Assembly (NCBI GenBank): GCA_963924565.1
Contig: OZ004613.1
Location: 6,696,001 to 6,760,000 of the forward strand
Length of the DNA stretch: 64,000 nucleotides
Direction of reading: 5' to 3'
DNA from: Ascidiella aspersa
Lineage: Eukaryota
Shown: positions 19,511 through 51,831 of the stretch, piece by piece
Position numbering within the stretch: position 1 is the first letter of the stretch
Layout of the letters: every line of letters begins with the position of its first letter
Made by a program: the position numbers and the translations under genes
Notes under the pieces: generated by a model
What the model saw: the letters and a program-made list of their open reading frames with translations, nothing else
Told to the model about the DNA's origin: nothing
Databases searched by the model: none

Positions 19511-20284
19511 ATGGCGCAAGTTGGTAGGTTAAACGGTAAAGTGGCCATTGTTACTGGAGCCGCAGGGGGCATCGGGGAAGCTATTTGCGAACGCTTTCTG
19601 ACCGAAGGTGCCAAAGTCATGATGGTGGATTTGAATGCTAAAAGTCTTGATAATAAGTACGAGAAATTTGGTGCCAAATATAAAGGCAAAGTGACGAAGT
19701 ATCAATGCGATGTAACTAAAGAAAGTTCTGCCTCTGAGGCTTTTGAGAAATCCGTCTTTGAATTCGGTCAGAATTGCAACGTTCTAGTCAACTGCGCCGG
19801 CATTGCACCTATGTCTTCGATCGTCGAAACAACCCTGGCTTCATTCAATCAGGTATTGGACGTGAACCTAAATAGCGTCTTCATCTTTACAAGAGAATTC
19901 TTAAGGCGACTTGAGCTTTGTGAGAACAAGGATTCAACAGGAGCAAGTATCGTTAACATCTCCAGCATTTCGGCTAAATTGGGATTTTTAGATCACGCAA
20001 GCTACGCTGCCTCTAAAGCTGGAGTGGTGGCCTTTACAAAGACGACGTGCATTGAGGCGGGAAGGTTCGGTGTCAGGTGCAATGCACTCACACCCTCATG
20101 GATCGAAACTCCGCTTCTACAAGATGCTGACCCTGCGATGATTGAAGGATCCATTCCTTTCATTCCATTGGGTCGCATTGGAAAACCCGTCGAAGTTGCT
20201 AACGCTTGTTTGTTTCTGGCAAGCGATGAAAGCTCTTACATCAATGGGGCTATACTTCAAGTATCCGGTGGCGCGATGCCTTAA
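19511..20284 (+). CDS. HSD17B8-like: Classical SDR, HSD17B8/FabG-like (SDR-8), 257 aa, NAD-type (Asp40)
   Basis: Intact motifs; ttgtatttcag|gttgataATG at 19511. Confidence 0.92.
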   Translation: MAQVGRLNGKVAIVTGAAGGIGEAICERFLTEGAKVMMVDLNAKSLDNKYEKFGAKYKGKVTKYQCDVTKESSASEAFEKSVFEFGQNCNVLVNCAGIAPMSSIVETTLASFNQVLDVNLNSVFIFTREFLRRLELCENKDSTGASIVNISSISAKLGFLDHASYAASKAGVVAFTKTTCIEAGRFGVRCNALTPSWIETPLLQDADPAMIEGSIPFIPLGRIGKPVEVANACLFLASDESSYINGAILQVSGGAMP

Positions 20285-20286
20285 AG

Positions 20287-20754
20287 CAGGGATAGGGAAC
20301 CTATGGATCGCGAGCCATATATGGCTCTTCTGATGAATCTTGCTGGAAAATAAATCTATAATCTATCATTTATTATCATGATTGGAATATAACTGCATGC
20401 AGCCACGGTCGCTTTCCCAACTTATTTTGTTTCTTTTCAACACACATAGTAGTAAATTTTTCTGCGATTCGCGCAACTGCTAACCCGTTTAATCGAATCT
20501 CGTTATCTCCAAAAGGCCTTGCTCTGTCGACGGAACTCCATAATAAAAGTTGTGCAAACTTATAGCTAATTGATTTTTTTGTGCTTAGTATATGCTGCCT
20601 TTGAAATGTGAACAAAATAAAAGGCCCTTTGCAAATTACTATTCTTTCCAACATATAAATAGATGTTAAAAAAGTAGTATATTGCTCTCATGGAATAACA
20701 ACCAAGAATATTTGGCTTTTATGGCTCCCTCAGCTAAAAGGTTCCCGACTCCTG
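20287..20754. mobile_element. hAT-type MITE inserted 2 nt after the SDR-8 stop codon
   Basis: TIR cagggatagggaacct / aggttcccgactcctg; TSD cctTAaag / cctTAaaa contains the TAA stop. Confidence 0.85.
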
Positions 20755-21075
20755 CCTTAAAAGATAAACAAGAAAACCAGTCTTCGTTTATAAACTGCAA
20801 TGTTTCTCCTAAATTTTTTTAGTTGATATTAAAACATGCTTATCTAACTGTTTTGATCTTTGTTTTGTACGTATACACTTATTCCAAGCAACATTATTTT
20901 GTATATACTCGAAAACTAAATTCATATACTGCAACGAACTCTTTCGGTATTTGTTTATTTTGTGCTTTACTGAAATTCATATGTGCATGTCAGTCATAGC
21001 TTGCGATACCTTGGTAGGATAATGGTGAATTATACCAATCCAAGGTAGCATAACCCATTAAACCAGTCTATATAT

Positions 21076-21290
21076 AAACCCGTAACCCAAACTATAGCCC
21101 AAACCCGAACCAACCCCTAACCGAACCCCTAACACAAACCCAACCCCTAATCCAAACCAAGATAAAACCCCTAACCCAAACCCTAACCGAACCCCTAACA
21201 CAAACCCAACCCCTAATCCAAATCCAACCTCTAATCAAGCCCAAAACATAACCCCAAACCCAACCCCTAATCCTACCCCTAACCCAACCC
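21076..21290. repeat. Degenerate telomere-like (CCCTAA/AACCC) tract
   Basis: Runs of ccctaa/cccaaa hexamers; a 42-nt block is repeated at 21115 and 21181. Confidence 0.8.
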
Positions 21291-21825: not shown

Positions 21826-22662
21826 TCATGCAAATAAACCACCAGATATTTGGAGTGTCGCTCCATTAACGTAAGAGCTTTCATCGCTTGCCAGGAACAA
21901 ACAAGCATTAGCAACTTCAATCGGCTTTCCAAGGCGCCTCATTGGAATCATCGCCTTTAACGTCTCAAACTTAGCAACTTCTACTTGCTTTCCAAAGCGC
22001 CCCATCGGTATCAATGGCCTGACGGCTTCAAGCTTCACCGGGTCAAAATTGTTTTGGATCAGAGTATCAATTACACCTGGCGTGACAGCATTGCACCTGA
22101 CACCGAACTTTCCTACTTCAATGCAAGTTGTCTTTGTGAAAGCATTCAAGCCGGCTTTAGAAGCAGCGTAGCTGGCATGATCTTCCACTCCGACCTGCCC
22201 AGCTAAACTGGACACATTCACGATACTTGCGCCTGTTGCATCCTTGTTCTTACCAAGCTCTAGTCGCCGAAGAAACTCCTTCGTGAAAGTGAAGACGCCG
22301 AATAGATTGGTGCTTAAGACCTCGTTGAAAGAAGCCAGGCTTGTTTGAACGATTGGAGACAAAGGCGCAACACCAGCGCAGTTTACCAAAACGTTGCAAT
22401 TTTGTCCGAACTGAGAAAGTGTCATTGAAAAAGACTCAGACGCGGATTTTTCCTCAGTTACATCACATTGAACCATGGCGACATTTTCCTTATATGTGAC
22501 ACTAAGCTTGTCGTAGACAGATTGCAGGTTTTCTAAATTCCGACCCACCATCATGACATTGGCACCTTCGGCCAGAAAGCGTTCGCAAATAGCTTCCCCG
22601 ATGCCCCCTGCGGCTCCAGTGACAATCGCCACTTTACCGTTTAACCTACCAACTTCCGACAT
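21826..22662 (-). CDS. HSD17B8-like: Classical SDR (SDR-9), 278 aa including a 21-aa paralog-derived insertion, NADP-type
   Basis: ATG (MSEVGR) at 22662; all motifs present; in-frame 63-nt insertion at 21910-21972. Confidence 0.85.
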   Translation of the reverse strand: MSEVGRLNGKVAIVTGAAGGIGEAICERFLAEGANVMMVGRNLENLQSVYDKLSVTYKENVAMVQCDVTEEKSASESFSMTLSQFGQNCNVLVNCAGVAPLSPIVQTSLASFNEVLSTNLFGVFTFTKEFLRRLELGKNKDATGASIVNVSSLAGQVGVEDHASYAASKAGLNAFTKTTCIEVGKFGVRCNAVTPGVIDTLIQNNFDPVKLEAVRPLIPMGRFGKQVEVAKFETLKAMIPMRRLGKPIEVANACLFLASDESSYVNGATLQISGGLFA

Positions 22663-25124: not shown

Positions 25125-25778
25125 ATGTCGCAAGTTGGCAGGTTACTCGGTAAAGTGGCGATTGTTACTGGAGCCGCAGGGGGCATCGGGGAAGCTATTT
25201 GCGAACGCTTTCTGGCCGAAGGTGCTAAAGTTATGATGGTGGGTCGGAATTTAGAAAACCTGCAATCTGTCTACGAAAAACTTAATGTCATATATAAGGA
25301 AAACGTCGCAATGGTTCAAGGCGATGTAACTCAGGAGAAATCCGCGTCTGAGTCTTTTTCAATCACACTTTCTAAGTTCGGTCAAAATTGTAACGTTTTG
25401 GTAAACTGCGCTGGTGTTGCGCCTTTGTCTCCAGGCGCAAGTATCGTGAATGTGTCCAGTTTAGCTGGGCAGGTCGGAGTGGAAGATCATGCCAGCTACG
25501 CTGCTTCTAAAGCCGGCTTGAATGCTTTCACAAAGACAACTTGCATTGAAGTAGGAAAGTTCGGTGTCAGGTGCAATGCTGTCACGCCAGGTGTAATTGA
25601 TACTCTGATCCAAAACAATTTTGACCCGGTGAAGCTTGAAGCCTTCAAGCAAATGATTCCAATGGGTCGCTTTGGAAAGCAAGTAGAAGTTGCTAATGCT
25701 TGTTTGTTCCTTGCAAGCGATGAAAGCTCTTACATTAATGGAGCGACGCTCCAAATATCTGGTGGTTTATTTGCATAA
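25125..25778 (+). CDS. SDR-10, inverted twin of SDR-9 with an in-frame 120-nt deletion (217 aa; probably catalytically impaired or a pseudogene)
   Basis: ATG at 25125; the junction cca|ggc at 25433/25434 removes IVQTSLAS...KNKDAT (40 aa). The 3' flank 25779-26070 is the reverse complement of ~21505-21825. Confidence 0.7.
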   Translation: MSQVGRLLGKVAIVTGAAGGIGEAICERFLAEGAKVMMVGRNLENLQSVYEKLNVIYKENVAMVQGDVTQEKSASESFSITLSKFGQNCNVLVNCAGVAPLSPGASIVNVSSLAGQVGVEDHASYAASKAGLNAFTKTTCIEVGKFGVRCNAVTPGVIDTLIQNNFDPVKLEAFKQMIPMGRFGKQVEVANACLFLASDESSYINGATLQISGGLFA

Positions 25779-26479: not shown

Positions 26480-26645
26480 AATTTAATTTGAGATTCTTCA
26501 TTTTTCGGCCCGTCAGCCGACTTCGACCCACCATCATGACTTTGGCACCTTCGGCCAGAAAGCGTTCGCAAATAGCTTCCCCGATGCCCCCTGCGGCTCC
26601 AGTGACAATGGCCACTTTACCCTGTAACCGACCAAATTGTTCCAT
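26480..26645 (-). pseudogene. SDR 5' fragment (SDR-11f), Gly-Arg type
   Basis: [41 protein letters not shown], then decays. Its upstream region (26646-27330) is an inverted homolog of the SDR-14/15/16 promoter. Confidence 0.88.
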
Positions 26646-28145: not shown

Positions 28146-28427
28146 ATGTCGCAAGTTGGTAGGTTAAACGGTAAAGTGGCCATTGTCACTGGAGCCGCAG
28201 GGGGCATCGGGGAAGCTATTTGCGAACGCTTTCTGGCCGAAGGTGCCAAAGTAATGATGGTGGACTGGAATCTTGAAAAACTTAATAACACTTACAAAAA
28301 ACTGTTTGCCAAATATCAGAGCAAAATAGCAATGTTTCAATGCGATGTGTCGGATGAGAATGCAGCGAATGAAGCGCTTTCAAAAACGCACTCTCAGTTT
28401 GGAGAACACTGCAATGTTCTAGTAAAT
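28146..28427 (+). pseudogene. SDR 5' half (SDR-12f) interrupted by a hAT transposon, Asp40 type
   Basis: 94 clean codons up to NVLVN, then the TIR cagggttgtccaaact begins at 28428; the 3' half is not found. Confidence 0.9.
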
Positions 28428-28776
28428 CAGGGTTGTCCAAACTTTATGGGACGCGGGACGCATTCGGCAAGGAAATTAGATCGCGGGCCGCAGTTGACAT
28501 TTTTCCTCTTATACACTGTCTCACCGTACCAGATGTAAAGTAAAACACGTACATGTGTAAATGAATCTTCATATTTATCATAAAAACATATTGGGGAATA
28601 GATTAAAGAAGCTAAGATGTGAATACTACGAATAAGAGAGTTTTGGAAATTTTGAACAACGTCAGTAGACCAGGAAACCTTAAAAATAACTGACAAGTAT
28701 GAATAAGAATAAACCATAAATTTATTCGTAAAAAATATTCAAGGAAGTACGTAAAACGGTACAGTTTACTTAAAAT

Positions 28777-32326: not shown

Positions 32327-33100
32327 ATGGCGCAAGTTGGTAGGTTAAACGGTAAAGTGACCGTTGTCACTGGAGCCGCAGGGGGCATCGGGGAAGCTAT
32401 TTGCGAACGCTTTCTGGCCGAAGGTGCCAACGTAATGATGGTGGATTGCCATTTGGAAAATCTCAAAGTTGTTCATGGAAAATTGAATGCCAGTTATGAA
32501 GGTAAAGTGGCGATGATTCGATGCGACGTAACGGAAGAGAATTCGGCTTGTGAGGCGTTCACGGCTGCAAACGAGCAGTTCAAGCAGAATTGTAACGTTT
32601 TGGTTAACTGCGCTGGTATTCCGGGCATGTCTCCAATTGTCGAAGCAAGCCTGGCTTTCTTCAATAAGGTATTAAGCGTCAACCTTAAGGGCGCCTTCAC
32701 TTTCACGAGAGAGTTCTTACGGCGACTTGAGCTTGGAGAGAAGAAGGATACGACAGGTGCCAGTATAGTTAACATCGCCAGCATTGCAGCCAATACAGGA
32801 TTTGAAAATTTATCTGCCTACGGTGCTTCTAAAGCTGGACTGGTCGCTTTCACAAAGACGACGTGCATTGAGGTGGGAAAATACGGTGTCAGGTGCAATG
32901 CGCTAACGCCAGGTGCAATTGACACAGCTTTCATAAGCGATACCCAAAAGGAACAGTTTGAGACGTTAAAGGCGATGATTCCAATGAGGCGCCTTGGAAA
33001 GCCGATTGAAGTTGCTAATGCTTGTTTGTTCCTGGCAAGCGATGAAAGCTCTTACATTAATGGGGCAACACTTCAAGTATCTGGTGGTTCTATGGCGTGA
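32327..33100 (+). CDS. HSD17B8-like: Classical SDR, HSD17B8/FabG-like (SDR-13), 257 aa, NAD-type (Asp40)
   Basis: Intact, YGASK; gttttgcag|ttttataATG. Confidence 0.92.
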   Translation: MAQVGRLNGKVTVVTGAAGGIGEAICERFLAEGANVMMVDCHLENLKVVHGKLNASYEGKVAMIRCDVTEENSACEAFTAANEQFKQNCNVLVNCAGIPGMSPIVEASLAFFNKVLSVNLKGAFTFTREFLRRLELGEKKDTTGASIVNIASIAANTGFENLSAYGASKAGLVAFTKTTCIEVGKYGVRCNALTPGAIDTAFISDTQKEQFETLKAMIPMRRLGKPIEVANACLFLASDESSYINGATLQVSGGSMA

Positions 33101-36962: not shown

Positions 36963-39900
36963 CAATTTAGTTATTTTTGCGTTATGCTTTTGAGACAACT
37001 GCATTTCTGTTCCAAATTTAAAATGGCGCAGGTTGATGATTACTAATATTTTCATAAAAAAACTAAATTAAATTTGTTTTTTGACTAAGTAACTTTTCGG
37101 AGAGTTTGAACTGTGAAGTAGCCCACAGTTGCAACCCAGCAGACTCTACATGTAGTATAAGCCTTACAGGCTCTATGAGTCTACAGAAATCGACATGAAG
37201 TATAAATGTAAGATTCTCAAAATCTATATGTATAATACATTTTTTCAAATAATAAATATTAGTCGAAAAATAATGCTTTGGTGCCTTCTTTTCAAAGATG
37301 TTTCGGATTCGTTGGTTGACCAATAGGCAACATTTGGTAAACATTTCAAATAAAAATTCATTTTCAACATCTTTATTCATTTTCAACATTTTCATCCATT
37401 TTCAACATTTTTATCAATGCAACCTACTTCAGTATGGGCTTTGATATTCTTACTACGTTAGACTACAAACTTTAGTTTTTAAGCATAGCCATTAGAGACA
37501 CCAGTAAATATTGCGCTCTTGGGTACGAAAACGACCCCGACAAGCACTTTCGCTTGGTTAAAGATCTGGAACGAAAAAGTTTAAGCAAGCCATTACCAAC
37601 TTAAGTCAAGTCTGTAGAGATTTGAAAGCACAGCGCATTTAACTTCAGGTTTAGAATGATCATTTTTCCAACTTTTGCAGTCTTATAGATTGTAAAATAT
37701 CATTAGATATTATAAAAATAATAAGCAAAAAACGGTCGCAAAATGCCCTGTCCGCAGCAAAATGTTTTTTATCTTAAATTGCTATATGGTGTTACTCGTA
37801 AACAAGGCTAGTAGACGGCTCGGGATTCGGGAATTAATTACAACTACCTAAGTCCACAGTCTAGAGTGGCTTACACAGTGGCAAGTATGTTCTACCAACC
37901 TATCCTGGTTGCATATGATAACCCTATACGTGTACATTCGTGTCTACCCACTCTATTTTAATACCATTGTTAGAAAGAATATTGCGCTATGGAGAGTCAG
38001 GCTCGAGATTCGAATTTTTTTTAGCCGTATAGTTAAAGCTCTTCTGAAATTGTGCTTTTACATATAAATAACAAACCGGGTGAAAAAATGACAGAAAAGG
38101 GGAAAAAGGCTCAAAATATGAAACTAAAACTTTTTAAGGCGAGCCCAAAACCAATTTAGTTATTTTTGCATTATGCTTTTGAGACAACTGCATTTCTGTT
38201 CCAAATTTAAAATGGCACAGGTTGATAATTACTAATATTTTCATAAAAAAAACTAAATTAAATTTGTTTTTTGACTAAGTAACTTTTCGGAGAGTTTGAA
38301 CTGTGAAGTAGCCCACAGTTGCAACCCAGCAGACTCTGCATGTATAGTATAAGCCTTACAGGCTCTATGAGTCTACAGAAATCGACATGAAGTATAAATG
38401 TAAGATTCTCAAAATCTATATGTATAAAACATTTTTTCAAGTAATAAATATTAGTCGAAAAATAATGCTTTGGTGCCTTCTTTTCAAAGATGTTTCGGAT
38501 TCGTTGGTTGACCAATAGGCAACATTTGGTAAACATTTCAAATAAAAATTCATTTTCAACATCTTTATTCATTTTCAACATTTTCATCCATTTTCAACAT
38601 TTTTATCAATGCAACCTACTTCAGTATGGGCTTTGATATTCTTACTACGTTAGACTACAAACTTTAGTTTTTAAGCATAGCCATTAGAGACACCAGTAAA
38701 TATTGCGCTCTTGGGTACGAAAACGACCCCGACAAGCACTTTTCGCTTGGTTAAAGATCTGGAACGAAAAGGTTTAAGCAAGCCATTACCAACGTTAGTC
38801 AAGTCTGTAGAGATTTGAAAGCACAGCGCATTTAACTTCAGGTTTAGAATGATCATTTTTCCAACTTTTGCAGTCTTATAGATTGTAAAATATCATTAGA
38901 TATTATAAAAATAATAAGCAAAAAACGGTCGCAAAATGCCCTGTCCGCAGCAAAATGTTTTTTATCTTAAATTGCTATATGGTGTTACTTGCAAACAAGG
39001 CTAGTAGACGGCTCGGGATTCGGGAATTAATTACAGCTACCTGAGTCCAGAGTCTAGAGTGGCTTACACAGTGGCAAGTATGTTCTACCAACCTATCGTG
39101 GTTGCATATGATAACCCTATACGTGTACATTCGTGTCTACCCACTCTATTTTAATACCATTGTTAGAAAGAATATTGTGCTATGGAGAGTCAGGCTCGAG
39201 ATTCGAATTTTTTTTTAGCCGTATAGTTAAAGCTCTTCTGAAATTGTGCTTTTACATATAAATAACAAACCGGGGAAAAAATGACAGAAAAGGGGAAAAC
39301 GGCTCAAAATATGAAACTAAACCTTTTTAAGGCGAGCCCAAAAGCAATTTAGTTATTTTTGCATTATGCTTTTGAGACAACTGCATTTCTGTTCCAAATT
39401 ATAATGGCACAGGTTGATAATTACTAATATTTTCATAAAAAAAACTAAATTAAATTTGTTTTTTGACTAAGTAACTTTTCGGAGAGTTTGAACTGTGAAG
39501 TAGCCCACAGTTGCAACCCAGTAGACTCTACATGTAGTATAAGCCTTACAGGCTCTATGAGTCTACAGAAATCGACATGAAGTATAAATGTAAGATTCTC
39601 AAAATCTATATGTATAATACATTTTTTCAAATAATAAATATTAGTCGAAAAATAATGCTTTGGTGCCTTCTTTTCAAAGATGTTTCTGATTCGTTGGTTG
39701 ACCAATAGGCAACATTTGGTAAACATTTCGAATAAAAATTCATTTTCAACATCTTTCTTCATTTTCAACATTTTGATCCATTTTCAACATTTTTATCAAT
39801 GCAACCTACTTCAGTATGGGCTTTGATATTCTTTCTACGTTAGACTACAGCCTTTAGTTTTTAAGCATAGCCATTAGAGACACCAGTAAATATTGCGCTC

Positions 39901-40535
39901 TTGGGTACGAAAACGACCCCGACAAGCACTTTTCGCTTGGTTAAAGATCTGGAACGAAAAAGTTTAAGCAAGCCATTACCAACTTAAGTCAAGTCTGTAG
40001 AGATTTGAAAGCACAGCGCATTTAACTTCAGGTTTAGAATGATCATTTTTCCAACTTTTGCAGTCTTATAGATTGTAAACTATCATTAGATATTATAAAA
40101 ATAATAAGCAAAAAACGGTCGCAAAATGCCCTGTCCGCAGCAAAATGTTTTTTATCTTAAATTGCTATATGGTGTTACTCGTAAACAAGGCTAGTAGACG
40201 GCTCGGGATTCGGGAATTAATTACAGCTACCTAAGTCCACAGTCTAGAGTGGCTTACACAGTGGCAAGTATGTTCTACCAACCTATCGTGGTTTCATATG
40301 ATAACCCTATACGTGTACATTCGTGTCTACCCGCTCTATTTTAATACCATTGTTAGAAAGAATATTGCGCTATGGAGAGTCAGGCTCGAGATTCGAATTT
40401 TTTTTTAGCCGCATAGTTAAAGCTCTTCTGAAATTGTGCTTTTACATATAAATAACGAACCGGGTGAAAAAATGACAGAAAAGGGGAAAAAGGCTCAAAA
40501 TATGAAACTGAACCTTTTTAAGGCGAGCCCAAAAG
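36963..40535 (+). repeat. 1.19-kb spacer unit, 3 tandem copies
   Basis: Unit starts at 36963, 38152 and 39345; next boundary at 40536. Confidence 0.92.
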
Positions 40536-41633
40536 CAATTTAGTTATTTTTGCATTATGCTTTTGTGACAACTGCATTTCTGTTCCAAATTTAAAATGGC
40601 ACAGGTTGATAATTACTAATATTTTCATAAAAAAAACTAAATTAAATTTGTTTTGGGACTAAGTAGTGACAGCCCAGCAGACTCTACATCAGGGTTAAGG
40701 AAAGTTGGCCACCAATGCCTACGGCTTGCACACTTTTTCTGTCCTGTCAGCCGATGTGGATATTTTGATTGATAGCTCATTTACCCCCTAAAACGAGAAA
40801 ATTTATCCCCTGGGGTAAATTTACCCCAGGTTAAGAAAGGCTGCTCTACCTGTAGTATAATCCTTACAGGCTCTACGAGTTTACAAAATCTACATGAAGT
40901 ATAAATGTAAGATTCTCAAAATCTATATGTATAAGACATTTTTTCAAATAATCAATATTAATCTAAAAATAACGCGTTGGTGCCTTCTTTTTAAAGATGT
41001 TCTGATTCGCTGAATGTTACATATTTGCGCAACAAGTTCGACCGAAATCGCAAAGTTTCTTAAATCTTATTAGTTTGTTGCGCAAAATGGTTACGTCATC
41101 TTTGAATATTTTAATTTCGCAGATGTTTTAGGGTATTGCAACACATTAAAGGTTTTGTCAAGCATCGATGTACGTAATCATGGCAAAAGTAGGGTAATAC
41201 AAGCGCTCGTTAAAATTTGCGACATATGTAATTGCAAGGCAGTGTAGCGGCGTTTGTACCCCATAAATTCGTGGCTAAACTTTCACTCTTTGCCGTTGTT
41301 TTTCTATTTATGTCACGTTCTCGTTCAACGCTCATATCATGCGCGATCTCGTTCAATAACTAATTACACGATGACGCAGAGTGCAACTGACTGGTCACAC
41401 GTTCAGATTTACAACGAAGGGCAGCCACAAACAGTTATGCAACTCAGAAAAAAAAAGACTCTAAAATAACAGCACAATTGAAGTGACAAAACTTTGTTAG
41501 GATCAGTTGTCAGCGATAAGAATACATGTAAGGAAGTCAGCGCAAGGAGATTGATACAAAAAAATAAATAATACGGTTGTCGCCATAATTGCATATTATT
41601 TTTTAGGCTGCATCTGTGTTCAGTATTTTTAGT

Positions 41634-42407
41634 ATGGCACCATTAGGTAGATTACAAGGTAAAGTGGCCATTGTCACTGGAGCCGCAGGGGGCATCGGGG
41701 AAGCTATTTGCGAACGTTTTTTGGCCGAAGATGCCAAAGTCATGATGCTGGGTCGGAATGAAGAAAATCTCAAAAATGTTTACGAAAAGTTAGTTGCGAA
41801 GTACAAAGAAAACGTGGCCATGATTCAATGTGACGTAGCTGAAGAGAATTCGGCTTGTGAGGCTTTTACTGCTGTAAGCAAGCAATTCGGAGGGAATTGT
41901 AACGTTTTGGTTAACTGCGCTGGTATTCCCGGCATGTCTCCAATCGTCGAAACAAGCCTGGATTCATTCAATAAGGTATTAAGCGTCAACCTTAAAGGCG
42001 CCTTCACTTTCACGAGAGAGTTCTTACGGCGACTTGAGCTTGCTGAGAACAAGGATTCAACAGGAGCAAGTATAGTTAACATCTCCAGCATTGCAGCCAA
42101 TACAGGATTTGAAAATTTATCTGCCTACGGTGCTTCTAAAGCTGGACTGGTCGCTTTCACAAAGACGACGTGCATTGAGGTGGGAAAATACGGTGTCAGG
42201 TGCAATGCGCTAACGCCAGGTGTAATTGACACAGCTTTCATAAGCGATACCCAAAAGGAACAGTTTGAGACGTTAAAGGCGATGATTCCAATGAGGCGCA
42301 TTGGAAAGCCGATTGAAGTTGCTAATGCTTGTTTGTTCCTGGCAAGCGATGAAAGCTCCTACATTAATGGGGCAACACTTCAAGTATCTGGTGGTTCTAT
42401 GGCGTGA
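41634..42407 (+). CDS. HSD17B8-like: Classical SDR (SDR-15), protein identical to SDR-14
   Basis: Identical translation with a few synonymous differences (gcg/gcc, aat/aac, agc/agt). Confidence 0.88.
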   Translation: MAPLGRLQGKVAIVTGAAGGIGEAICERFLAEDAKVMMLGRNEENLKNVYEKLVAKYKENVAMIQCDVAEENSACEAFTAVSKQFGGNCNVLVNCAGIPGMSPIVETSLDSFNKVLSVNLKGAFTFTREFLRRLELAENKDSTGASIVNISSIAANTGFENLSAYGASKAGLVAFTKTTCIEVGKYGVRCNALTPGVIDTAFISDTQKEQFETLKAMIPMRRIGKPIEVANACLFLASDESSYINGATLQVSGGSMA

Positions 42408-42809
42408 ATCATTTAACGAATAAAGCTCCACAGACTGGATTGCTATATTTTAGGTTGCGTTATTGTTGTTACAAAGCTAATAATTTGACTTGTCGTTAAA
42501 ATGAATAAATAGCTTCAGAATAGCGACATATTTTAATGGAATAAATGCCGTGTTGTAAACAAGTCATTTTGAAATGGCATAAGTCAAAGTCGGGATATTT
42601 GTAAAATAACTTAAGTCCAAGTCAAGTCTGTTTGAATAAATACCAAGTCAAGTCCCAGTTAAGTCATAATTAGAGCAAATCTATTTCAAGTCAAGTCCTT
42701 GTCATAAAAATTAAAATTTAATTCTCTACCATTCATGGACAATAATTCAACTGAAACATAAGAAAAACGCAAAATATATGACAAGCTAATATTTTTACGT
42801 ACATATATT

Positions 42810-45191
42810 CAATTTAGTTATTTTTGCGTTATGCTTTTAAGACAACTGCATTTCTGTTCCAAATTTAAAATGGCGCAGGTTGATGATTACTAATATTTTC
42901 ATAAAAAAACTAAATTAAATTTGTTTTTTGACTAAGTAACTTTTCGGAGAGTTTGAACTGTGAAGTAGCCCACAGTTGCAACCCAGCACACTCTACATGT
43001 AGTATAAGCCTTACAGGCTCTATGAGTCTACAGAAATCGACATGAAGTATAAATGTAAGATTCTCAAAATCTATATGTATAATACATTTTTTCAAATAAT
43101 AAACATTAGTCGAAAAATAATGCTTTGGTGCCTTCTTTTCAAAGATGTTTCGGATTCGTTGGTTGAACAATTGGCAACATTTGGTAAACATTTCAAATAA
43201 AAATTCATTTTCAACATCTTTATTCATTTTCAACATTTTCATCCATTTTCAACATTTTTATCAATGCAACCTACTTCAGTATGGGCTTTGATATTCTTAC
43301 TACGTTAGACTACAGCCTTTAGTTTTTAAGCATAGCCATTAGAGATACCAGTAAATATTGCGCTCTTGGGTACGAAAACGACCCCGACAAGCACTTTCGC
43401 TTGGTTAAAGATCTGGAACGAAAAAGTTTAAGCAAGCCATTACCAAAGTAAGTCAAGTCTGTAGAGATTTGAAAGCACAGCGCATTTAACTTCAGGTTTA
43501 GAATGATCATTTTTCCAACTTTTGCAGTCTTATAGAATCTAGAATATCATTAGATATTATAGAAATAATAAGCAAAAAACGGTCGCAAAATGCCCTGTCC
43601 GCAGCAAAATGTTTTTTATCTTAAATTGCTATATGGTGTTACTTGCAAACAAGGCTAGTAGACGGCTCGGGATTCGGGAATTAATTACAGCTACCTAAGT
43701 CCACAGTCTAGAGTGGCTTACACAGTGGCAAGTATGTTCTACCAACCTATCGTGGTTGCATATGATAACCCTATACGTGTACATTCGTGTCTACCCACTC
43801 TATTTTAATACCATTGTTAGAAAGAATATTGCGCTATGGAGAGTCAGGCTCGAGATTCGAATTTTTTTTAGCCGTATAGTTAAAGCTCTTCTGAAATTGT
43901 GCTTTTACATATAAATAACAAACCGGGTGAAAAAATGACAGAAAAGGGGAAAAAGGCTCAAAATATGAAACTAAACCTTTTTAAGGCGAGCCCAAAACCA
44001 ATTTAGTTATTTTTGCATTATGCTTTTGAGACAACTGCATTTCTGTTCCAAATTTAAAATGGCACAGGTTGATAATTACTAATATTTTCATAAAAAAAAC
44101 TAAATTAAATTTGTTTTTTGACTAAGTAACTTTTCGGAGAGTTTGAACTGTGAAGTAGCCCACAGTTGCAACCCAGTAGACTCTACATGTAGTATAAGCC
44201 TTACAGGCTCTACGAGTCTACAGAAATCGACATGAAGTATAAATGTAAGATTCTCAAAATCTATATGTATAATACATTTTTTTAAATAATAAATATTAGT
44301 CGAAAAATAATGCTTTGGTGCCTTCTTTTCAAAGATGTTTCTGATTCGTTGGTTGACCAATAGGCAACATTTGGTAAACATTTCGAATAAAAATTCATTT
44401 TCAACATCTTTCTTCATTTTCAACATTTTGATCCATTTTCAACATTTTTATCAATGCAACCTACTTCAGTATGGGCTTTGATATTCTTACTACGTTAGAC
44501 TACAACCTTTAGTTTTTAAGCATAGTTATTAGAGACACCAGTAAATATTGCGCTCTTGGGTACGAAAACGACCCCGACAAGCACTTTTCGCTTGGTTAAA
44601 GATCTGGAACGAAAAAGTTTAAGCAAGCCATTACCAACGTTAGTCAAGTCTGTAGAGCTTTGAAAGCACAGCGCATTTAACTTCAGGTTTAGAATGATCA
44701 TTTTTCCAACTTTTGCAGTCTTATAGATTGTAAAATATCATTAGATATTATAAAAATAATAAGCAAAAAACGGTCGCAAAATGCCCTGTCCGCAGCAAAA
44801 TGTTTTTTATCTTAAATTGCTATATGGTATTACTTGCAAACAAGGCTAGTAGACGGCTCGGGATTCGGGAATTAATTACAGCTACCTAAGTCCACAGTCT
44901 AGAGTGGCTTACACAGTGGCAAGTATGTTCTACCAACCTATCGTGGTTGCATATGATAACCCTATACGTGTACATTCGTGTCTACCCACTCTATTTTAAT
45001 ACCATTGTTAGAAAGAATATTGCGCTATGGAGAGTCAGGCTCGAGATTCGAATTTTTTTTTGAGCCGTATAGTTAAAGCTCTTCTCAAATTGTGCTTTTA
45101 CATATAAATAACGAACAGGGTGAAAAAATGACAGAAAAGGGGAAAAAGGCTCAAAATATGAAACTGAACCTATTTAAGGCGAGCCCAAAAG
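42810..45191 (+). repeat. 1.19-kb spacer unit, 2 tandem copies
   Basis: Unit starts at 42810 and 43999; next boundary at 45192. Confidence 0.92.
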
Positions 45192-46275
45192 CAATTTACT
45201 TATTTTTGAAATATGCTTTTGTGACAACTGCATTTCTGTTCCAAATTTAAAATGGCACAGGTTGATAATTACTAATATTTTCATAAAAAAAAACTAAATT
45301 AAATTTGTTTTGGGACTAAGTAGTGACAGCCCAGCAGACTCTTCATCAGGGGTAAGGAAAGTTGGCCACCAATACCTACGGCTTGCACACTTTTTCTGTC
45401 CTGTCAGCCGATGTGGATATTTTGATTGATAGCTCATTTACCGCCTAAAACGAGAAAATTTATCCCCTGTGGTAAATTTTCCCCAGGTTAAGAAAGGCTG
45501 CTCTACATGCAGACTCTACGAGTTTACAAAATTTACATGAAGTATAAATGTAAGATTCACAAAATCTATATGTATAAGACATTTTTTCAGATAATCAATA
45601 TTAATCTAAAAATAACGCGTTGGTGCCTTCTTTTTAAAGATGTTCTGATTCGCTGAATGTTACATATTTGCGCAACAAGTTGGACCGAAATCAAAGTTTC
45701 TTAAATCTTATTAGTTTGTTGCGCAAAATGGTTACGTCATCTTTGAATATTTTAATTTCGCAGATGTTTTAGGGTATTGCGACACATTAAAGGTTTTGTC
45801 AAGCATCGATGTACGTAATCATGGCAAAAGTAGGGTAATACAAGCGCTCGTTAAATTTTGCGACATATGTAATTGCAAGGCAGTGTAGCGGCGTTTGTAC
45901 CCCATAAATTCGTGGCTAAACTTTCACTCTTTGCCGTTGTTTTTTCTATTTATGTCACGTTCTCGTTCAACGCTCATATCATGCGCGATCTCGTTCAATA
46001 ACTAGTTACACGATGACGCAGAGTGCAACTGACTGGTCACACGTTCAGATTTACAACGAAGGGCAGCCACAAACAGTTATGCAACTGAGAAAAAAAAAGA
46101 CTCTAAAATAACAGCACAATTGAAGTGACAAAACTTTGTTAGGATCAGTTGTCAGCGATAAGAATACATGTAAGGAAGTCAGCGCAAGGAGATTGATACA
46201 AAAAAATAAGTAATACGGTTGTCGCCATAATTGCATATTATTTTTTAGGCTGCATCTGTGTTCAGTATTTTTAGT

Positions 46276-47052
46276 ATGGCACCATTAGGTAGATTACAAG
46301 GTAAAGTGGCCATTGTCACTGGAGCCGCAGGGGGCATCGGGGAAGCTATTTGCGAACGTTTTTTGGCCGAAGATGCCAAAGTCATGATGCTGGGTCGGAA
46401 TGAAGAAAATCTCAAAAATGTTTACGAAAAGTTAGTTGCGAAGTACAAAGAAAATGTGGCCATGATTCGATGCGATGTAGCTGAAGAGAATTCGGCTTGT
46501 GAGGTCTTTACTGCTGTTAAAAAGCAATTCGGACAGAATTGCAATGTTCTGGTTAATAATGCTGCTGTCTTGTCAGTGTCGTCGATCGTTGACACAACCA
46601 TGGATTCATTCAACCAAGCATTGGACGTCAACCTGAACGGCGTCTTTATCTATACAAAGGAATTTCTCAAGCGGCTCAAACTTACCGAGGGTCAAAATGC
46701 AGCAGGCGCAAACATCGTTAACGTCACCAGCATGGCGGGTAGGCTGGGATTCAAAGATTGCTCTGCCTACTCTGCTTCTAAAGGTGGAGTGGATGCTTTC
46801 ACAAAGACGACATGCATTGAGGTGGCAAGGTTCGGTGTCAGGTGCAATGGGGTTTCGCCCTGTGTTATTGATACTCCATTGCTACACCGCTCGTTTAACA
46901 AAGCCTATATCGATGCTGTCAAGCCAATGATTCCGATGGGGCGCTTTGGAAAGCCGGTAGAAGTTGCTAATGCTTGTTTGTTCCTGGCAAGCGATGAAAG
47001 CTCTTACATCGATGGAGCGATCTTAGAAATATCTGGTGGTTTTATGGCCTAA
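46276..47052 (+). CDS. HSD17B8-like: Classical SDR, HSD17B8/FabG-like (SDR-16), 258 aa, NADP-type
   Basis: Intact, YSASK; the first 64 residues are identical to SDR-14/15 and the C-terminal two thirds are distinct. Confidence 0.92.
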   Translation: MAPLGRLQGKVAIVTGAAGGIGEAICERFLAEDAKVMMLGRNEENLKNVYEKLVAKYKENVAMIRCDVAEENSACEVFTAVKKQFGQNCNVLVNNAAVLSVSSIVDTTMDSFNQALDVNLNGVFIYTKEFLKRLKLTEGQNAAGANIVNVTSMAGRLGFKDCSAYSASKGGVDAFTKTTCIEVARFGVRCNGVSPCVIDTPLLHRSFNKAYIDAVKPMIPMGRFGKPVEVANACLFLASDESSYIDGAILEISGGFMA

Positions 47053-48700: not shown

Positions 48701-48756
48701 AACAAATCACTTTTGCAAGAGAGTTTCACAGAATTTTTAACACATATGTGTGTGCA

Positions 48757-49862
48757 TCTATGATTGTATAAGAATGCTTTGAACCACACACATCACGTAG
48801 GCTTCATGGCTACCAACTGTCATACAGTCGTCATGTAGAGGATTTGTACTATGACGTCTCGATATTACGCCACACCAACTTTGGCGTATCTGGCAAAATT
48901 CGGAGAAATCACCGCGTGGTTTTAAATGGGAATTCCCGAGGGTATTTCCCAGGTGCGCAGAGCGGCGATGCGTGTTTATAAATACCGAAGCGGACAAAAC
49001 AAACAAACAGGGATTTGTAATATGAGTACTCAAAAGGAATTCTGGTTTTGTGAAATGTACGTCAGACAAAGGCTGTTATTTCCGAATTTTAACAAATCAA
49101 TAAAACCAGTAGGTACGATTGCTCAAGGGATTTAAACTGTGTGTACTGTATATATACCGGAAAATATATCAATATTTCGGTATATAAACTGGTTGTTGCT
49201 AAATGGTTCGCCCCTATTCGTAAGTGTAAAACATAAATCGTGCTAATTGCTTTGAATCAAATGGCGAATAAGGGTAAGCGTACAAAACGTATTCACGCAG
49301 TTAAAACAGCAATAAAACGAGTAAGATGGTGGAAGTCATGGTCCAGTGCCCCCACCATGGTTCCTCCCCTAAACGTATGATTGTATTGTTGGAAATGTTG
49401 GCGCAACACCATGTTGTAAAGCGGTATCTCCCAATAGTTCCACCATTTTGTGTTCTATTTAGGTTTCGCTTGGTATTTGTGCCCATTAAAAGGATTCTTG
49501 GCACCGCCTACTTGTAAATACCATGCGCGTCAAAACACCCAAATAAATCTTAAAAAAACCTGAGCCACTGAAATACCAAATTATCTTTTCGATCGCTTTA
49601 TTTAACTTTGTCTTGTTATGGCTAATTCACTTCACCTCACTTGGTTTGTTTTATTTCCTTTAAGTATTGCGTTTTTCACTTATTACCACTAATTGTTTCC
49701 CGCCTTTGTTTTATTGCTAAGGGCAATTCCTTAGTTTCATCAGTGGCTAAAACTAAAGAACCACGACAGTCTGGTTTGAGCGTGGTGTGGTACAGTGTAT
49801 TGGTTTTCATGAGCAAGCGAGCTAGCGTACGTGCTAGTCGCTTTGCTACAGTTAGAGCCTAG
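48757..49862 (+). mobile_element. Candidate non-autonomous Helitron
   Basis: A|TCtatgattgtataagaatg at 48757; imperfect 36-nt palindrome at 49812-49847 ending 11 nt before CTAG|T (49859-49862). The pairing of the two ends is inferred. Confidence 0.5.
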
Positions 49863-50431
49863 TGTTGGCGTTCGCGCCTCACGGCCACACAGAATAATAA
49901 ATACCAATGTTTAACTGGAGTGCGGCATCCGGTCAGTGACAGGCCGTCAAGCAGTGAATAAGATATGGCGCAACAATAACACTGATCATGTTTCAAAGCG
50001 AATTTATTTCGGTCATGGATTTATGGTACAACTTTAGTCCTTTAAAGCTTAATAAATACAATTTTTGCTTATATTTTAGTGTGTCAGACTCACTTGTTTA
50101 CAACTAGCCAAATTTCTAAAAGAAAAAATAAGCGTTTTTATTATTTAAAATGTCAAACGAAACTCCAGAAATAAAAAACTCTTCTCGAACGAATAAACCC
50201 ACAGGTCTGTAACATATAATATTGTAATGTTTATGAAAATCTAGCATCAGCTTTAAACATTTCTTCCTTGAGATATTTTAAAATATGTGCCAACTGTTTT
50301 TAACTATAGTCCCGAGAAGGCTAGAACACTTTTGTATAAATGTAACAATCAAAACAAATAGGAAAATATCACTTATACCTATACTTTAGCCTGCCTAAAA
50401 GTTAAAAGGTATCGTTTTTTTCGTGAGATTA

Positions 50432-50635
50432 TCAGGGTCGTAATGACTTAAGTCGATGACTTGAATTAAGTGCACTTAGGTTACTGTTTTCGAATGGCTT
50501 TACGTTTAGTCGTTTACCCAATTTTAATATCTTGAATTTAAAGACTAGAATTGCTCGTATTATGACTTTACTGGGACTTGACTTGTTATTTATTCAAAAT
50601 GACTTGACTTGGACTTAAGTCATTTCAAAATGAAT
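50432..50635. repeat. Dispersed gacttgactt/aagtcaagtc-rich element (related copies at ~18500-18770, 33243-33395, 36700-36855 and 42550-42700)
   Basis: Clustered aagtc pentamers and cagtgttgt-like ends; probably a TIR-element family. Confidence 0.5.
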
Positions 50636-51057
50636 AGTTAAAAGTAATCGTTTTCGACTCGTTTTTCTCGTCGCCAACGAGTAATTCGACAGGTTCAACA
50701 GCCATACTTCGTAACCATAGTTATATTAAGTCTAAATATGACGTAATTTTTTAGCAATTTCTCGATTTTTGTTTAGATCGGTAATCGATTTTCCAGGGTA
50801 AATTTGTCAAAAGTTTTAAGGGTAGCCGCAATATATTACTAACCGACACTATAGCTTTGTATTTTGGAAAAACTTAACTGATACGTTAGATTAAAAAAAG
50901 GAAAGAAACCATTTGATGTTGGGTTTAAGTGAAAGATTAACTTTATTTTACGTGGTAGTAAAAGTCACGTTCGGAACAACCCCTAGCGTATTGTAATAAA
51001 CTATTCCGGCGTATAAAAGCATACAGCGCTGTCTGTCAACATTCCTTTGTGAAAACG

Positions 51058-51831
51058 TCACCTCATTAAACCGCCAGATATGTCAAGGATGGCACCGTTT
51101 ATGTAAGAGCTTTCATCGCTCGCCAGGAACAAACAAGCATTAGCAACTTCGGCCGGCTTACCGAAGCGCCTCATTGGAATATGTGGCTTTGCTTTATCAG
51201 GAAATGCACGGCCGTAGGGACTCAGCATTGTAGTGTCGATTAAACCTGGGGTGGCTGCATTGCACCTGACACCGAACTTTCCCACCTCAATGCACGTCGT
51301 TTTCGTTAAGGCATTTACACCAGCTTTGGAAGCAGCGTAGGACGAACCTTTTAGCAATCCAACATTTCCCGCTAAGCTTGAAACATTAACGATACTTGCT
51401 CCAGCTGCATCCTTGTTTTTACCAAGCTCAAGTCTCTGAAGAAACTCCCTTGTATAAGTGAAGGCGCCAAACAGATTGATGCCTATGACATGATTAAAAG
51501 AAGCCAGGGTTGTGTCGACGATCGGCGATAAAGGTAGGACACCTGCATTGTTTACTAGAACATTGCATTTCTGACCGAATCGGTTGCTAATAGCACTAAA
51601 AGCCTCACGCGCGGAACTCTCTTTAGATACGTCGGATTGAATCATCGCCACGTTGCCTTTAAATGTTTCACTGAGTTTTTTGAAGGCAGAATTTAGATTT
51701 TCTTGATTCCGACCCACCATCATTACTTTGGAACCTTCGGCCAGAAAGCGTTCGCAAATAGCTTCCCCGATGCCCCCTGCGGCTCCAGTGACAATAGCCA
51801 CTTTACCTTTTAACCTACCAACTTGCGCCAT
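51058..51831 (-). CDS. HSD17B8-like: Classical SDR, HSD17B8/FabG-like (SDR-18), 257 aa, NADP-type
   Basis: Intact motifs; ATG (MAQVGR) at 51831. Confidence 0.92.
   Translation of the reverse strand: MAQVGRLKGKVAIVTGAAGGIGEAICERFLAEGSKVMMVGRNQENLNSAFKKLSETFKGNVAMIQSDVSKESSAREAFSAISNRFGQKCNVLVNNAGVLPLSPIVDTTLASFNHVIGINLFGAFTYTREFLQRLELGKNKDAAGASIVNVSSLAGNVGLLKGSSYAASKAGVNALTKTTCIEVGKFGVRCNAATPGLIDTTMLSPYGRAFPDKAKPHIPMRRFGKPAEVANACLFLASDESSYINGAILDISGGLMR

What the first reader, a model, noticed from the sequence alone, without database searches (positions are those of the whole stretch)
19511..51831. Binary NAD/NADP cofactor switch segregating among paralogs
Seen: residues 40-41 at the end of beta2 are either Asp-x (SDR-1, 2, 3p, 5p, 8, 12f, 13) or Gly-Arg (SDR-4, 9, 10, 11f, 14, 15, 16, 18). 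Known: in classical SDRs, Asp 18 residues after the last Gly of TGxxxGxG marks NAD(H) preference (cD1d), while a basic residue at the next position marks NADP(H) preference (cP2); HSD17B8 is Asp-type. Inference: the cluster encodes both oxidative (NAD+) and reductive (NADPH) versions, and the switch lies just 3' of the invariant island where it can be exchanged as a small cassette.
Basis: partly seen in the sequence, partly recalled or inferred. Interest (0 to 1): 0.75.

Follow-up and report, generated by a model that had tools for sequence, protein, structure and literature searches.

The report
NAD/NADP-type modules shuffled among SDR paralogs
A tandem array of small dehydrogenase genes carries either an NAD-type (Asp) or an NADP-type (Gly-Arg) cofactor motif, and recombination between neighbouring copies has moved the front part of the gene that holds this motif onto different enzyme bodies.

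Summary
In the window, 7 SDR copies have Asp-x and 8 have Gly-Arg at residues 40-41, 18 and 19 residues after the last Gly of TGAAGGIG. Across the genome, 39 of 40 readable copies are D-x (22), G-R (16) or D-R (1).

Gly40/Arg41 align without gaps to Gly37/Arg38 of NADP-dependent L. brevis R-ADH. Asp40 aligns to the Asp of HSD17B8. NAD versus NADP preference is therefore well predicted, but it was not measured.

The classes do not follow the gene tree. Codons 95-279 reject Gly-Arg monophyly (p-AU 1.65e-84), whereas codons 42-80 do not (p 0.26).

S14 and S15 are unequal-crossover hybrids. Their 5' flank and about the first 86 codons come from S16 (Gly-Arg). The rest of the gene and the 3' flank come from S13 (Asp). 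L007 and S4 are older mosaics.

The switch always travels with codons 42-62, so it moves as a large 5' module. A two-codon cassette is not supported.

Asp is ancestral. First readers of this scan noted the same switch and the same hybrids on this genome only.

Verdict: real, and partly as interpreted. It is a new variant of known kinds (SDR cofactor determinants; Lepore-type hybrids). Interest is moderate.

The parts
698..1465 (-). S1, intact SDR, Asp-type (DY; switch codons 1343-1348)
2351..3118 (-). S2, intact SDR, Asp-type (DW; switch codons 2996-3001)
5206..5952 (+). S3p, frameshifted SDR pseudogene, Asp-type (DL; 5314-5319)
8689..9462 (+). S4, intact SDR, Gly-Arg type (8806-8811). Multi-mosaic: codons 42-62 are nearest L012 (GR), codons 87-130 are 92% identical to S1 (Asp), codons 250-279 are 98% identical to S16
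13586..14367 (+). S5p, SDR with a frameshift at the Gly motif, Asp-type (DL; 13705-13710)
19511..20284 (+). S8, intact SDR, Asp-type (DL; 19628-19633)
21826..22662 (-). S9, SDR, Gly-Arg type (22540-22545), with a 63-nt in-frame insert that matches S13
25125..25778 (+). S10, Gly-Arg type (25242-25247), with a 40-codon in-frame deletion that removes the Asn119 region
26487..26645 (-). S11f, N-terminal fragment, Gly-Arg type (26523-26528)
28146..28430 (+). S12f, truncated copy, Asp-type (DW; 28263-28268), followed by hAT transposase ORFs
32327..33100 (+). S13, intact SDR, Asp-type (DC; 32444-32449). It is the 3' parent of the hybrids
35787..36560 (+). S14, hybrid SDR, Gly-Arg type (35904-35909). 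5' flank plus CDS nt 1-258 resemble S16; nt 267 to the end plus 3' flank resemble S13. Breakpoint at 36044-36053
41634..42407 (+). S15, second copy of the hybrid (protein identical to S14), Gly-Arg type (41751-41756)
46276..47052 (+). S16, intact SDR, Gly-Arg type (46393-46398). It is the 5' parent of the hybrids
51058..51831 (-). S18, intact SDR, Gly-Arg type (51709-51714)
32588..46533 (+). Three tandem units that run from mid-gene to mid-gene (32588-36044, 36048-41891, 41895-46533). They are 96-98% identical end to end and differ by 1, 3 and 2 copies of a ~1.19-kb sub-repeat. This is the footprint of the unequal crossovers
35811..35903 (+). Island 1 (codons 9-39, shown on S14). It is nearly invariant, also at synonymous sites, among all paralogs, and ends at the codon before the switch

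Best explanation
The window is part of a large array of intronless classical SDR genes. Each copy carries one of two versions of the adenosine-ribose subsite at the end of strand beta2. One version is Asp40 followed by a non-basic residue, predicted to prefer NAD(H). The other is Gly40-Arg41, predicted to prefer NADP(H), as in L. brevis R-ADH Gly37-Arg38. Asp is ancestral, probably Asp followed by a basic residue, as in L024 (D-R) and the outside relatives P0001 and P0003 (D-K). The Gly-Arg version arose within a crown group of the family. Homologous recombination between paralogs then redistributed the 5' part of the gene (switch plus codons 42 to about 62-90, sometimes with the promoter) onto different C-terminal, substrate-binding bodies. 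The clearest case is S14/S15, produced by unequal crossing-over between S16 (Gly-Arg, 5' part) and S13 (Asp, 3' part). The result is pairs of enzymes with nearly the same pocket and opposite predicted cofactor class (S13 versus S14/S15; L009 versus L007). Shown here: the dimorphism, the alignment to characterised enzymes, the mosaicism and its breakpoints, purifying selection, and the polarity. Inferred: the cofactor preference itself, and the oxidative versus reductive roles in the cell.
For: Dimorphism: (22 D-x, 16 G-R, 1 D-R and 1 degenerate among 40 copies).

Homology to characterised sites. Literature passages.

Classical SDR identity: Pfam adh_short_C2 scores 209 and 201 bits against a cut-off of 27. 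T15, G16, G20, G22, S152, Y165 and K169 are invariant and N119 at least 90% conserved in 40 sequences.

Trees: codons 95-279 need 5 changes of class, of which 3 are forced by starred branches. S13(D)+S14/S15(GR) has support 100/100 and L007(GR)+L009(D) 100/99. Codons 42-80 need 3 changes, and starred branches force only 1. AU tests on the C-terminal part reject Gly-Arg monophyly (p 1.65e-84), S14+S15+S16+L005+L006 (p 1.5e-4) and L007+S9+S10 (p 0.0087). The N-terminal part does not reject Gly-Arg monophyly (p 0.258).

Hybrid S14: versus S16 it is 97-100% identical from -1200 to CDS nt ~210, then 40-70%. Versus S13 it is ~40% identical upstream and 95-100% from nt ~345 through +1900. In the triplet test the left side splits 50:4 and the right side 10:138, with the breakpoint at nt 258-267 and permutation p<=0.0005. 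For S13 versus S14, dS is 0.95 in codons 40-86 and 0.09 in codons 87-249. For S14 versus S16, dS is 0.04 in codons 1-39, 0.16 in codons 40-86 and 0.94 in codons 87-249. The three mid-gene-to-mid-gene units are 96-98% identical.

Older mosaics: L007 has a breakpoint at nt ~219-222, p<=0.0005; S4 with parents L012 and L022 gives p 0.002.

Linkage block: the nearest neighbour is of the same class in 24 of 24 copies for codons 42-62, and in 12 of 24 for codons 87-130. Class differentiation is strongest in codons 42-61 (p 0.001-0.003) and absent in codons 1-39.

Selection: dN/dS is 0.24-0.45 in 13 pairs, and the Arg and Gly codons vary synonymously.

Polarity: in the rooted tree all basal lineages are Asp-type, and all 11 Gly-Arg rows lie in one clade with support 91/85. 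Eleven of the 12 outside sequences are Asp-type.

Transcription: sparse RNA-seq reads lie on the S13 and S14 coding regions, with the first mate on the minus strand.
Against: No enzyme was assayed. Cofactor preference rests on two residues and on homology. In one classical SDR the equivalent swaps killed activity instead of switching cofactor.

The N-terminal segment is short (117 nt). It also fails to reject the C-terminal groupings S13+S14+S15 (p 0.262) and L007+L009 (p 0.111), so the tree conflict is proved from one side only. For S14 and L007 it is carried by flanks, dS and the triplet tests.

The groups in the AU and triplet tests were named after the trees were seen.

S4 with parents L012 and S1 is weak (p 0.067; 0.043 without the switch codons).

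A control triplet also shows mosaicism (S1/S2/L022, p 0.0045), so recombination is general and not aimed at the switch.

The permutations ignore relatedness.

The RNA evidence is thin. Only 64 reads were laid from about 6% of one run, and 51 of them fit only in part. At two S13 places all reads differ from the reference, so they come from another individual or another copy.

Several copies are broken (S3p, S5p, S10, S11f, S12f) and S9 carries an insert.

Confidence: 0.7

Rival explanations
1. Small-cassette gene conversion. Short conversion tracts anchored in the invariant island just 5' of codon 40 copy only the switch and a few neighbouring codons between paralogs.
For: Island 1 (codons 9-39) is homogenised, also at synonymous sites: pairwise synonymous difference is 0.19 against 0.39 elsewhere, MWU p 6e-5. 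It shows no class differentiation. It ends exactly at the codon before the switch. Short exchanged patches do exist elsewhere: S4 codons 87-130 are 92% identical to S1, and S4 codons 250-279 are 98% identical to S16. The 63-nt S13-like insert in S9 is flanked by the first 11 nt of island 2 on both sides.
Against: No pair of copies shares codons 42-62 while differing in class: the nearest neighbour is of the same class in 24 of 24. In the datable event the whole 5' flank moved and the breakpoint lies at nt 258-267, not in the island. The L007 breakpoint is at nt ~219-222. Because the island carries no signal, a 5' boundary inside it can be neither shown nor excluded for the old events.
Confidence: 0.2
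2. Repeated point mutation. Asp to Gly (GAT to GGT) and gain of Arg happened several times independently under selection for NADP use, and similar neighbouring residues are convergent.
For: D to G is a single transition. A D-R state exists (L024, GAT CGC), from which G-R is one step. The short N-terminal tree does not prove a single origin: it needs 3 changes in the best tree.
Against: Synonymous divergence shows the mosaic. For S13 versus S14, dS is 0.95 in codons 40-86 against 0.09 in codons 87-249. For L007 versus L009 it is 1.25 against 0.45. The non-coding flanks of S14 match two different parents. Gly-Arg monophyly is not rejected for codons 42-80 (p 0.258).
Confidence: 0.07
3. The dimorphism has no functional consequence. 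Both classes use the same cofactor or are dual-specific, or much of the array is decaying, and the two motifs are neutral markers of two old 5' haplotypes.
For: No assays exist. Of the 17 window copies or fragments, 7 are broken, truncated or degenerate (S3p, S5p, S6f, S10, S11f, S12f, S17f) and S9 carries an insert. RNA support is sparse. Motif swaps do not always switch preference.
Against: Arg41 and Gly40 are conserved through synonymous codon changes, while residue 41 drifts in the Asp class. dN/dS is 0.24-0.45. The same two residues decide preference in L. brevis R-ADH. The catalytic residues are intact in the full-length window copies.
Confidence: 0.2

Closest known systems
Lactobacillus brevis / L. 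kefir NADP-dependent R-specific alcohol dehydrogenase (PDB 1nxq, 4rf5) and its G37D variant
   Same: It is a classical SDR of about 250 aa. Gly37-Arg38 at the end of beta2 align without gaps to Gly40-Arg41 of S14. The whole proteins match at E ~1e-38. G37D is reported to prefer NAD+ (review passage).
   Different: It is a bacterial single gene and the switch was made in the laboratory. Here both states occur naturally among paralogs. S14 scores 186.5 bits against the NCBIfam equivalog cut-off of 400, so it is not an orthologue. The substrates here are unknown.
HSD17B8 / bacterial FabG-like reductases (PDB 4cql, 4nbu)
   Same: These are the best full-length PDB matches (4nbu E 3.6e-45 and 8.1e-44; 4cql 2.2e-41). 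Their Asp aligns with residue 40.
   Different: The FabG equivalog models are not reached: 211-230 bits against a cut-off of 296. Identity is about 40%. There is no evidence of a role in fatty-acid synthesis. The genes are intronless and massively amplified.
Lepore / anti-Lepore haemoglobin and CYP11B1/CYP11B2 chimeric genes (unequal crossing-over between tandem paralogs; recalled, apart from the search listing)
   Same: A hybrid gene lies between its two parents in the same orientation. It has the 5' flank of the downstream parent, the 3' flank of the upstream parent, and one breakpoint at a homologous position.
   Different: What is re-paired here is a predicted cofactor-specificity module (with its promoter) and a substrate-binding body of an oxidoreductase. 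The hybrid has itself been duplicated (S14, S15).
Clostridium absonum 7alpha-HSDH (Ala37-Arg38)
   Same: It is an NADP-dependent classical SDR in which the Arg directly after the 'Asp position' binds the 2'-phosphate and stacks on the adenine (passages).
   Different: It has two further arginines (16 and 194) that the copies here lack; their Gly motif is TGAAGGIG. Its A37D and R38 mutants were inactive rather than switched.

Membership tests
Classical SDR (Pfam adh_short / adh_short_C2) | Profile score above Pfam's gathering threshold over a single domain of about 250 aa | tested here: met
   S14 scores 209.2 and S8 201.2 bits on PF13561 (cut-off 27); on PF00106 they score 176.9 and 162 bits
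Classical SDR (Pfam adh_short / adh_short_C2) | N-terminal TGxxxGxG glycine motif | tested here: met
   TGAAGGIG at residues 15-22. T15, G16, G20 and G22 are invariant in 40 aligned sequences (alignment)
Classical SDR (Pfam adh_short / adh_short_C2) | Catalytic Asn-Ser-Tyr-Lys tetrad | tested here: met
   S152, Y165 and K169 are invariant and N119 at least 90% conserved. Exceptions: S10 has lost the N119 region, and L015 has Gly at 152
NAD(H)-preferring classical SDR (Asp at end of beta2; subclass name cD1d recalled) | Acidic residue about 18-20 residues after the Gly motif, directly after beta2 | tested here: met
   Asp40 in 7 window copies and 22 genome-wide. It aligns to the Asp of 4cql and 4nbu. 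The rule is stated in PMC2792337 (passage)
NAD(H)-preferring classical SDR (Asp at end of beta2; subclass name cD1d recalled) | Measured preference for NAD(H) | not testable with these tools
   Needs kinetics
NADP(H)-preferring classical SDR (basic residue after beta2; subclass name cP2 recalled) | No acidic residue at the key position, and a basic residue at the next one | tested here: met
   Gly40-Arg41 in 8 window copies and 16 genome-wide. They align without gaps to residues 37-38 of 1nxq. The best N-terminal PDB matches all have G-R at the aligned positions
NADP(H)-preferring classical SDR (basic residue after beta2; subclass name cP2 recalled) | Measured preference for NADP(H) | not testable with these tools
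   Needs kinetics.
3-oxoacyl-ACP reductase FabG (NCBIfam equivalogs) | Score above the curated equivalog cut-off | tested here: not met
   On NF004198, S14 scores 216.7, S13 211.4 and S8 229.6 bits against a cut-off of 296. On TIGR01830 they score 189-197 against 297.75
Glucose 1-dehydrogenase subfamily NF005559 | Score above the curated subfamily cut-off (215) | tested here: inconclusive
   S14 221.4, S13 215.0, S8 201.4 bits. These are borderline, and a subfamily model says little about substrate
Unequal-crossover (anti-Lepore-type) hybrid gene | The 5' flank and 5' coding part match one tandem parent, and the 3' coding part and 3' flank match the other | tested here: met
   sliding identity; dS by segment
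Unequal-crossover (anti-Lepore-type) hybrid gene | A single breakpoint at a homologous position; the hybrid lies between the parents in the same orientation; the duplicated unit runs from mid-gene to mid-gene | tested here: met
   The breakpoint is at nt 258-267, with sites split 50:4 on the left and 10:138 on the right. The three units are 96-98% identical end to end

The most novel reading that the evidence does not exclude
The array works as a natural combinatorial library. Two cofactor modules (NAD-type and NADP-type, each with its own promoter) are repeatedly re-paired by non-allelic recombination with diversified substrate pockets. Selection keeps matched pairs such as S13/S14-S15 and L009/L007. 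Such a pair would oxidise and reduce the same small molecule with opposite cofactors. It could therefore act as an oxidation/reduction couple, for example for epimerisation, deracemisation or on/off control of a signalling metabolite.
Probability: 0.25. Interest if true: 0.75.

Novelty: new variant of a known kind. Interest (0 to 1): 0.55.

Why it matters
The two residues that decide NAD versus NADP use in classical SDRs are textbook knowledge, and they are usually changed one enzyme at a time in the laboratory. Here a genome offers the natural experiment. Closely related substrate-binding bodies are joined to either cofactor module: for S13 versus S14, dN is 0.036 in codons 87-249. The joining event can still be read in the flanks. 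This gives ready-made enzyme pairs for testing how far the beta2-alphaC-beta3 module alone sets cofactor preference and reaction direction. It also gives a concrete case of recombination, not point mutation, spreading a cofactor switch through a gene family. My searches of the held library found no paper describing such a case. That is not proof of absence.

Tried and rejected
Single origin with strict vertical descent of the Gly-Arg class: rejected by the C-terminal tree.

Convergent point mutation as the main cause: rejected for S14/S15 and L007 on synonymous divergence and flanks.

Breakpoints inside island 1: not seen for S14 or L007.

FabG or R-ADH orthology: not met.

Origin of the family: the nearest outside proteins are only 51% (P0001) and 42% (P0002, P0003) identical, and the rest are about 40% bacterial-type SDRs. 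Human HSD17B8 scores about as well as the bacterial enzymes. I therefore make no claim of horizontal transfer.

One search was wasted: I set max_evalue too tight, so it showed only the three alignments already seen. One search, with the N-terminal 68 residues, gave the R-ADH register.

Literature: the names cD1d and cP2 gave 0 papers. An Arg38 / L. kefir search gave nothing specific (listing only).

Papers seen: PMC2792337, passages. PMC12433975, one passage. PMC4785404, passages; its Supplementary Table S3 on arginines in other SDRs was not seen and could refine how many basic residues NADP-type SDRs need. All other papers were seen as search listings only.

Full report
**What is there.** The window (G000:C7:6696001-6760000, GC about 38%, no N) holds 17 copies or fragments of one intronless gene of about 257 codons. 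Pfam places it in the classical short-chain dehydrogenases: adh_short_C2 scores 209 and 201 bits against a cut-off of 27. The Gly motif is TGAAGGIG at residues 15-22. S152, Y165 and K169 are invariant and N119 nearly so in a 40-sequence alignment. The genome has 77 matches at E<=1e-10, most of them on the same contig within about 100 kb upstream of the window and inside it. No NCBIfam equivalog is reached. The FabG model scores 211-230 bits against a cut-off of 296. The glucose 1-dehydrogenase subfamily model is borderline at 215-221 against 215. The substrate is therefore unknown.

**The observation.**
- Asp-x at residues 40-41: S1, S2, S3p, S5p, S8, S12f, S13.
- Gly-Arg at residues 40-41: S4, S9, S10, S11f, S14, S15, S16, S18.

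Asp40 lies 18 residues after the last Gly of the motif. I added 14 full-length copies and 10 broken ones from the rest of the genome. The census of 40 readable copies is D-x 22, G-R 16, D-R 1 (L024) and degenerate 1 (S17f). The Arg codon varies synonymously (CGG 8, CGA 6, CGC 2), and so does the Gly codon (GGT 13, GGA 2, GGG 1). In the Asp class residue 41 is C, L, Y or W. This points to selection holding Arg only where Gly replaces Asp.

**What the two states mean.** S14 residues 5-44 align without gaps to residues 2-41 of L. brevis R-specific alcohol dehydrogenase 1nxq, so Gly40-Arg41 correspond to its Gly37-Arg38. A review passage reports that the G37D mutant prefers NAD+. Gly40 aligns with the Asp of 4nbu, 4ni5 and 2cfc. 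Asp40 of S8 aligns with the Asp of human HSD17B8. Kavanagh et al. [quoted passage not shown] In C. absonum 7alpha-HSDH the Arg at this position binds the 2'-phosphate, but its A37D and R38 mutants were inactive rather than switched. The prediction of NAD-type versus NADP-type is thus well founded and untested. 'Oxidative versus reductive' is a further inference from cellular cofactor ratios (general knowledge).

**The classes do not follow the gene tree.**
- Codons 95-279: the class needs 5 changes, of which starred branches force 3. S13 (Asp) is sister to S14/S15 (Gly-Arg) with support 100/100. L007 (Gly-Arg) is sister to L009 (Asp) with support 100/99. Gly-Arg monophyly is rejected (p-AU 1.65e-84).
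- Codons 42-80: the class needs 3 changes, and starred branches force only 1. S14/S15 group with S16, L006 and L005. L007 groups with S9 and S10. Gly-Arg monophyly is not rejected (p 0.258).
- The C-terminal data reject these N-terminal groupings (p 1.5e-4 and 0.0087).
- The short N-terminal segment does not reject the C-terminal groupings (p 0.262 and 0.111), so the conflict is proved from one side only.
- The groups were chosen after seeing the trees.

**The datable event.** S14 is 97-100% identical to S16 from at least 1.2 kb upstream to about CDS nt 210, and unrelated downstream. It is unrelated to S13 upstream and 95-100% identical to S13 from about nt 345 through at least 1.1 kb of 3' flank. 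A triplet test puts the breakpoint between nt 258 and 267 (codons 87-90). Informative sites split 50:4 on the left and 10:138 on the right, permutation p<=0.0005. Synonymous divergence tells the same story. For S13 versus S14, dS is 0.95 in codons 40-86 and 0.09 in codons 87-249. For S14 versus S16, dS is 0.04 and 0.16 in the two 5' segments and 0.94 in the body. The stretches from mid-S13 to mid-S14, mid-S14 to mid-S15 and mid-S15 to mid-S16 align end to end at 96-98%. They differ only by 1, 3 and 2 copies of a ~1.19-kb sub-repeat. This is the footprint of unequal crossing-over between S16 (5' part, Gly-Arg) and S13 (3' part, Asp-type lineage), followed by a second round. S14 and S15 are anti-Lepore-type hybrids that join an NADP-type module and the S16 promoter region to the body of S13.

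**Older mosaics and the extent of the linked block.**
- L007 is S9-like in the 5' part and L009-like in the 3' part, with a breakpoint at nt ~219-222 (p<=0.0005).
- S4 is a multiple mosaic. With parents L012 and L022 the test gives p 0.002. With L012 and S1 it gives 0.067, or 0.043 without the switch codons.
- A control triplet within one class (S1/S2/L022) is also mosaic (p 0.0045). Another (L008/L013/L017) is not (p 0.41).

Recombination is thus general in the family. The nearest neighbour is of the same class in 24 of 24 copies for codons 42-62, and in 12 of 24 for codons 87-130. Class differentiation peaks in codons 42-61 (permutation p 0.001-0.003), fades by about codon 100 and is absent in codons 1-39 (the permutations ignore relatedness). 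The switch therefore travels with the rest of the beta2-alphaC-beta3 region. I found no case where it moved alone.

**The islands.** Codons 9-39 and 250-267 are nearly invariant among paralogs, also at synonymous sites. Pairwise synonymous difference is 0.19 and 0.14 against 0.39 elsewhere for codons whose amino acid is at least 90% conserved (MWU p 6e-5 and 4e-6). I delimited the islands after seeing the data. Island 1 ends at the codon before the switch. The breakpoints I could place lie 100-150 nt further 3'. The 63-nt S13-like insert in S9 is flanked on both sides by the first 11 nt of island 2. That is direct evidence of an exchange anchored in an island.

**Polarity.** The protein tree was rooted on nine bacterial-type relatives. 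The family plus P0001-P0003 forms a clade with support 97/97. L024 (D-R) pairs with P0001 (D-K) with support 94/85. All basal lineages are Asp-type. All 11 Gly-Arg rows lie in one clade with support 91/85, together with five Asp rows. Eleven of the 12 outside sequences have Asp; P0007 has G-R. Asp is ancestral, possibly with a basic neighbour. All Asp-class codons at position 41 begin with T (TGC, TTG, TAC, TGG), whereas the Arg codons are CGN and L024 has GAT CGC. This fits decay of an ancestral CGN by C-to-T change, and it is an inference.

**Function and expression.** dN/dS is 0.24-0.45 in 13 pairs. One RNA-seq run of the same species label was sampled to about 6%. It gave 64 reads on 31800-37000, with depth up to 5 on the S13 coding region and up to 3.7 on S14. 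All of these had the first mate on the minus strand, which is the sense orientation for most stranded libraries. However, 51 reads fit only in part, and at two S13 places all reads differ from the reference. This is weak positive evidence of transcription.

**Comparison with what is known, and verdict.** The residues are the textbook determinants. The hybrid mechanism is that of Lepore-type genes (recalled). New here is their combination: a natural family in which recombination re-pairs predicted NAD-type and NADP-type modules with different enzyme bodies. Three literature searches found no such report. I rate it a new variant of a known kind, with interest 0.55. First readers of this scan noted the switch and the hybrids on this same genome; I reached both before that look-up.

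Noticed in passing
window 28777-30700 (-): Three ORFs (281, 223 and 131 aa) of a hAT-type transposase lie directly after the truncated S12f; the first carries Pfam Dimer_Tnp_hAT (E 1.2e-6). No 3' remainder of S12 was found beyond them.
   Followed up: partly
window, codons 9-39 and 250-267 of every SDR copy (e.g. 35811-35903 and 36534-36587 in S14): Two nucleotide islands are nearly invariant, also at synonymous sites, among paralogs that are 60-75% identical elsewhere. Synonymous pair difference is 0.19 and 0.14 against 0.39. The cause could be gene-conversion homogenisation or a nucleotide-level constraint; it is not resolved.
   Followed up: partly
window 21910-21972 (-), inside S9: A 63-nt in-frame insert is identical in sequence to the matching part of S13. 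It is flanked on both sides by the same 11 nt that start island 2. This looks like a misaligned ectopic exchange.
   Followed up: partly
window 25125-25778 (+), S10: A 40-codon in-frame deletion removes the helix with catalytic Asn119. Otherwise the copy is 90-100% identical to S9.
   Followed up: no
window 33514-45191: A ~1.19-kb sub-repeat is present in 1, 3 and 2 copies in the three intergenic spacers. Each copy carries a conserved 108-110-aa ORF on the minus strand (e.g. 33614-33940, 37063-37395).
   Followed up: partly
window 53083-53632 (+): A perfect tandem repeat with a 39-nt period (13 or more units) is open in two frames.
   Followed up: no
window 54507-54800 (-) and 61436-61750 (-): Thr/Ser/Pro-rich, mucin-like ORFs each end in a hydrophobic tail.
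   Followed up: no
L024 (G000:C7:6376246-6377016, -): This is the most divergent family member (57% identical to S14) and has Asp-Arg (GAT CGC) at the switch. It pairs with the outside protein P0001 (D-K). It is a possible survivor of the ancestral state, from which both classes are one nucleotide change away.
   Followed up: partly
L015 (G000:C7:9034580-9035344, +): This is an intact ORF of the Gly-Arg class with Gly in place of the catalytic Ser152, so it is possibly inactive.
   Followed up: no
whole family: The nearest proteins outside this genome in a 5.8-billion-protein collection are only 51% and 42% identical and carry no names. The family is intronless, and homology between older copies stops within about 50 nt of the start and stop codons.
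   Followed up: partly
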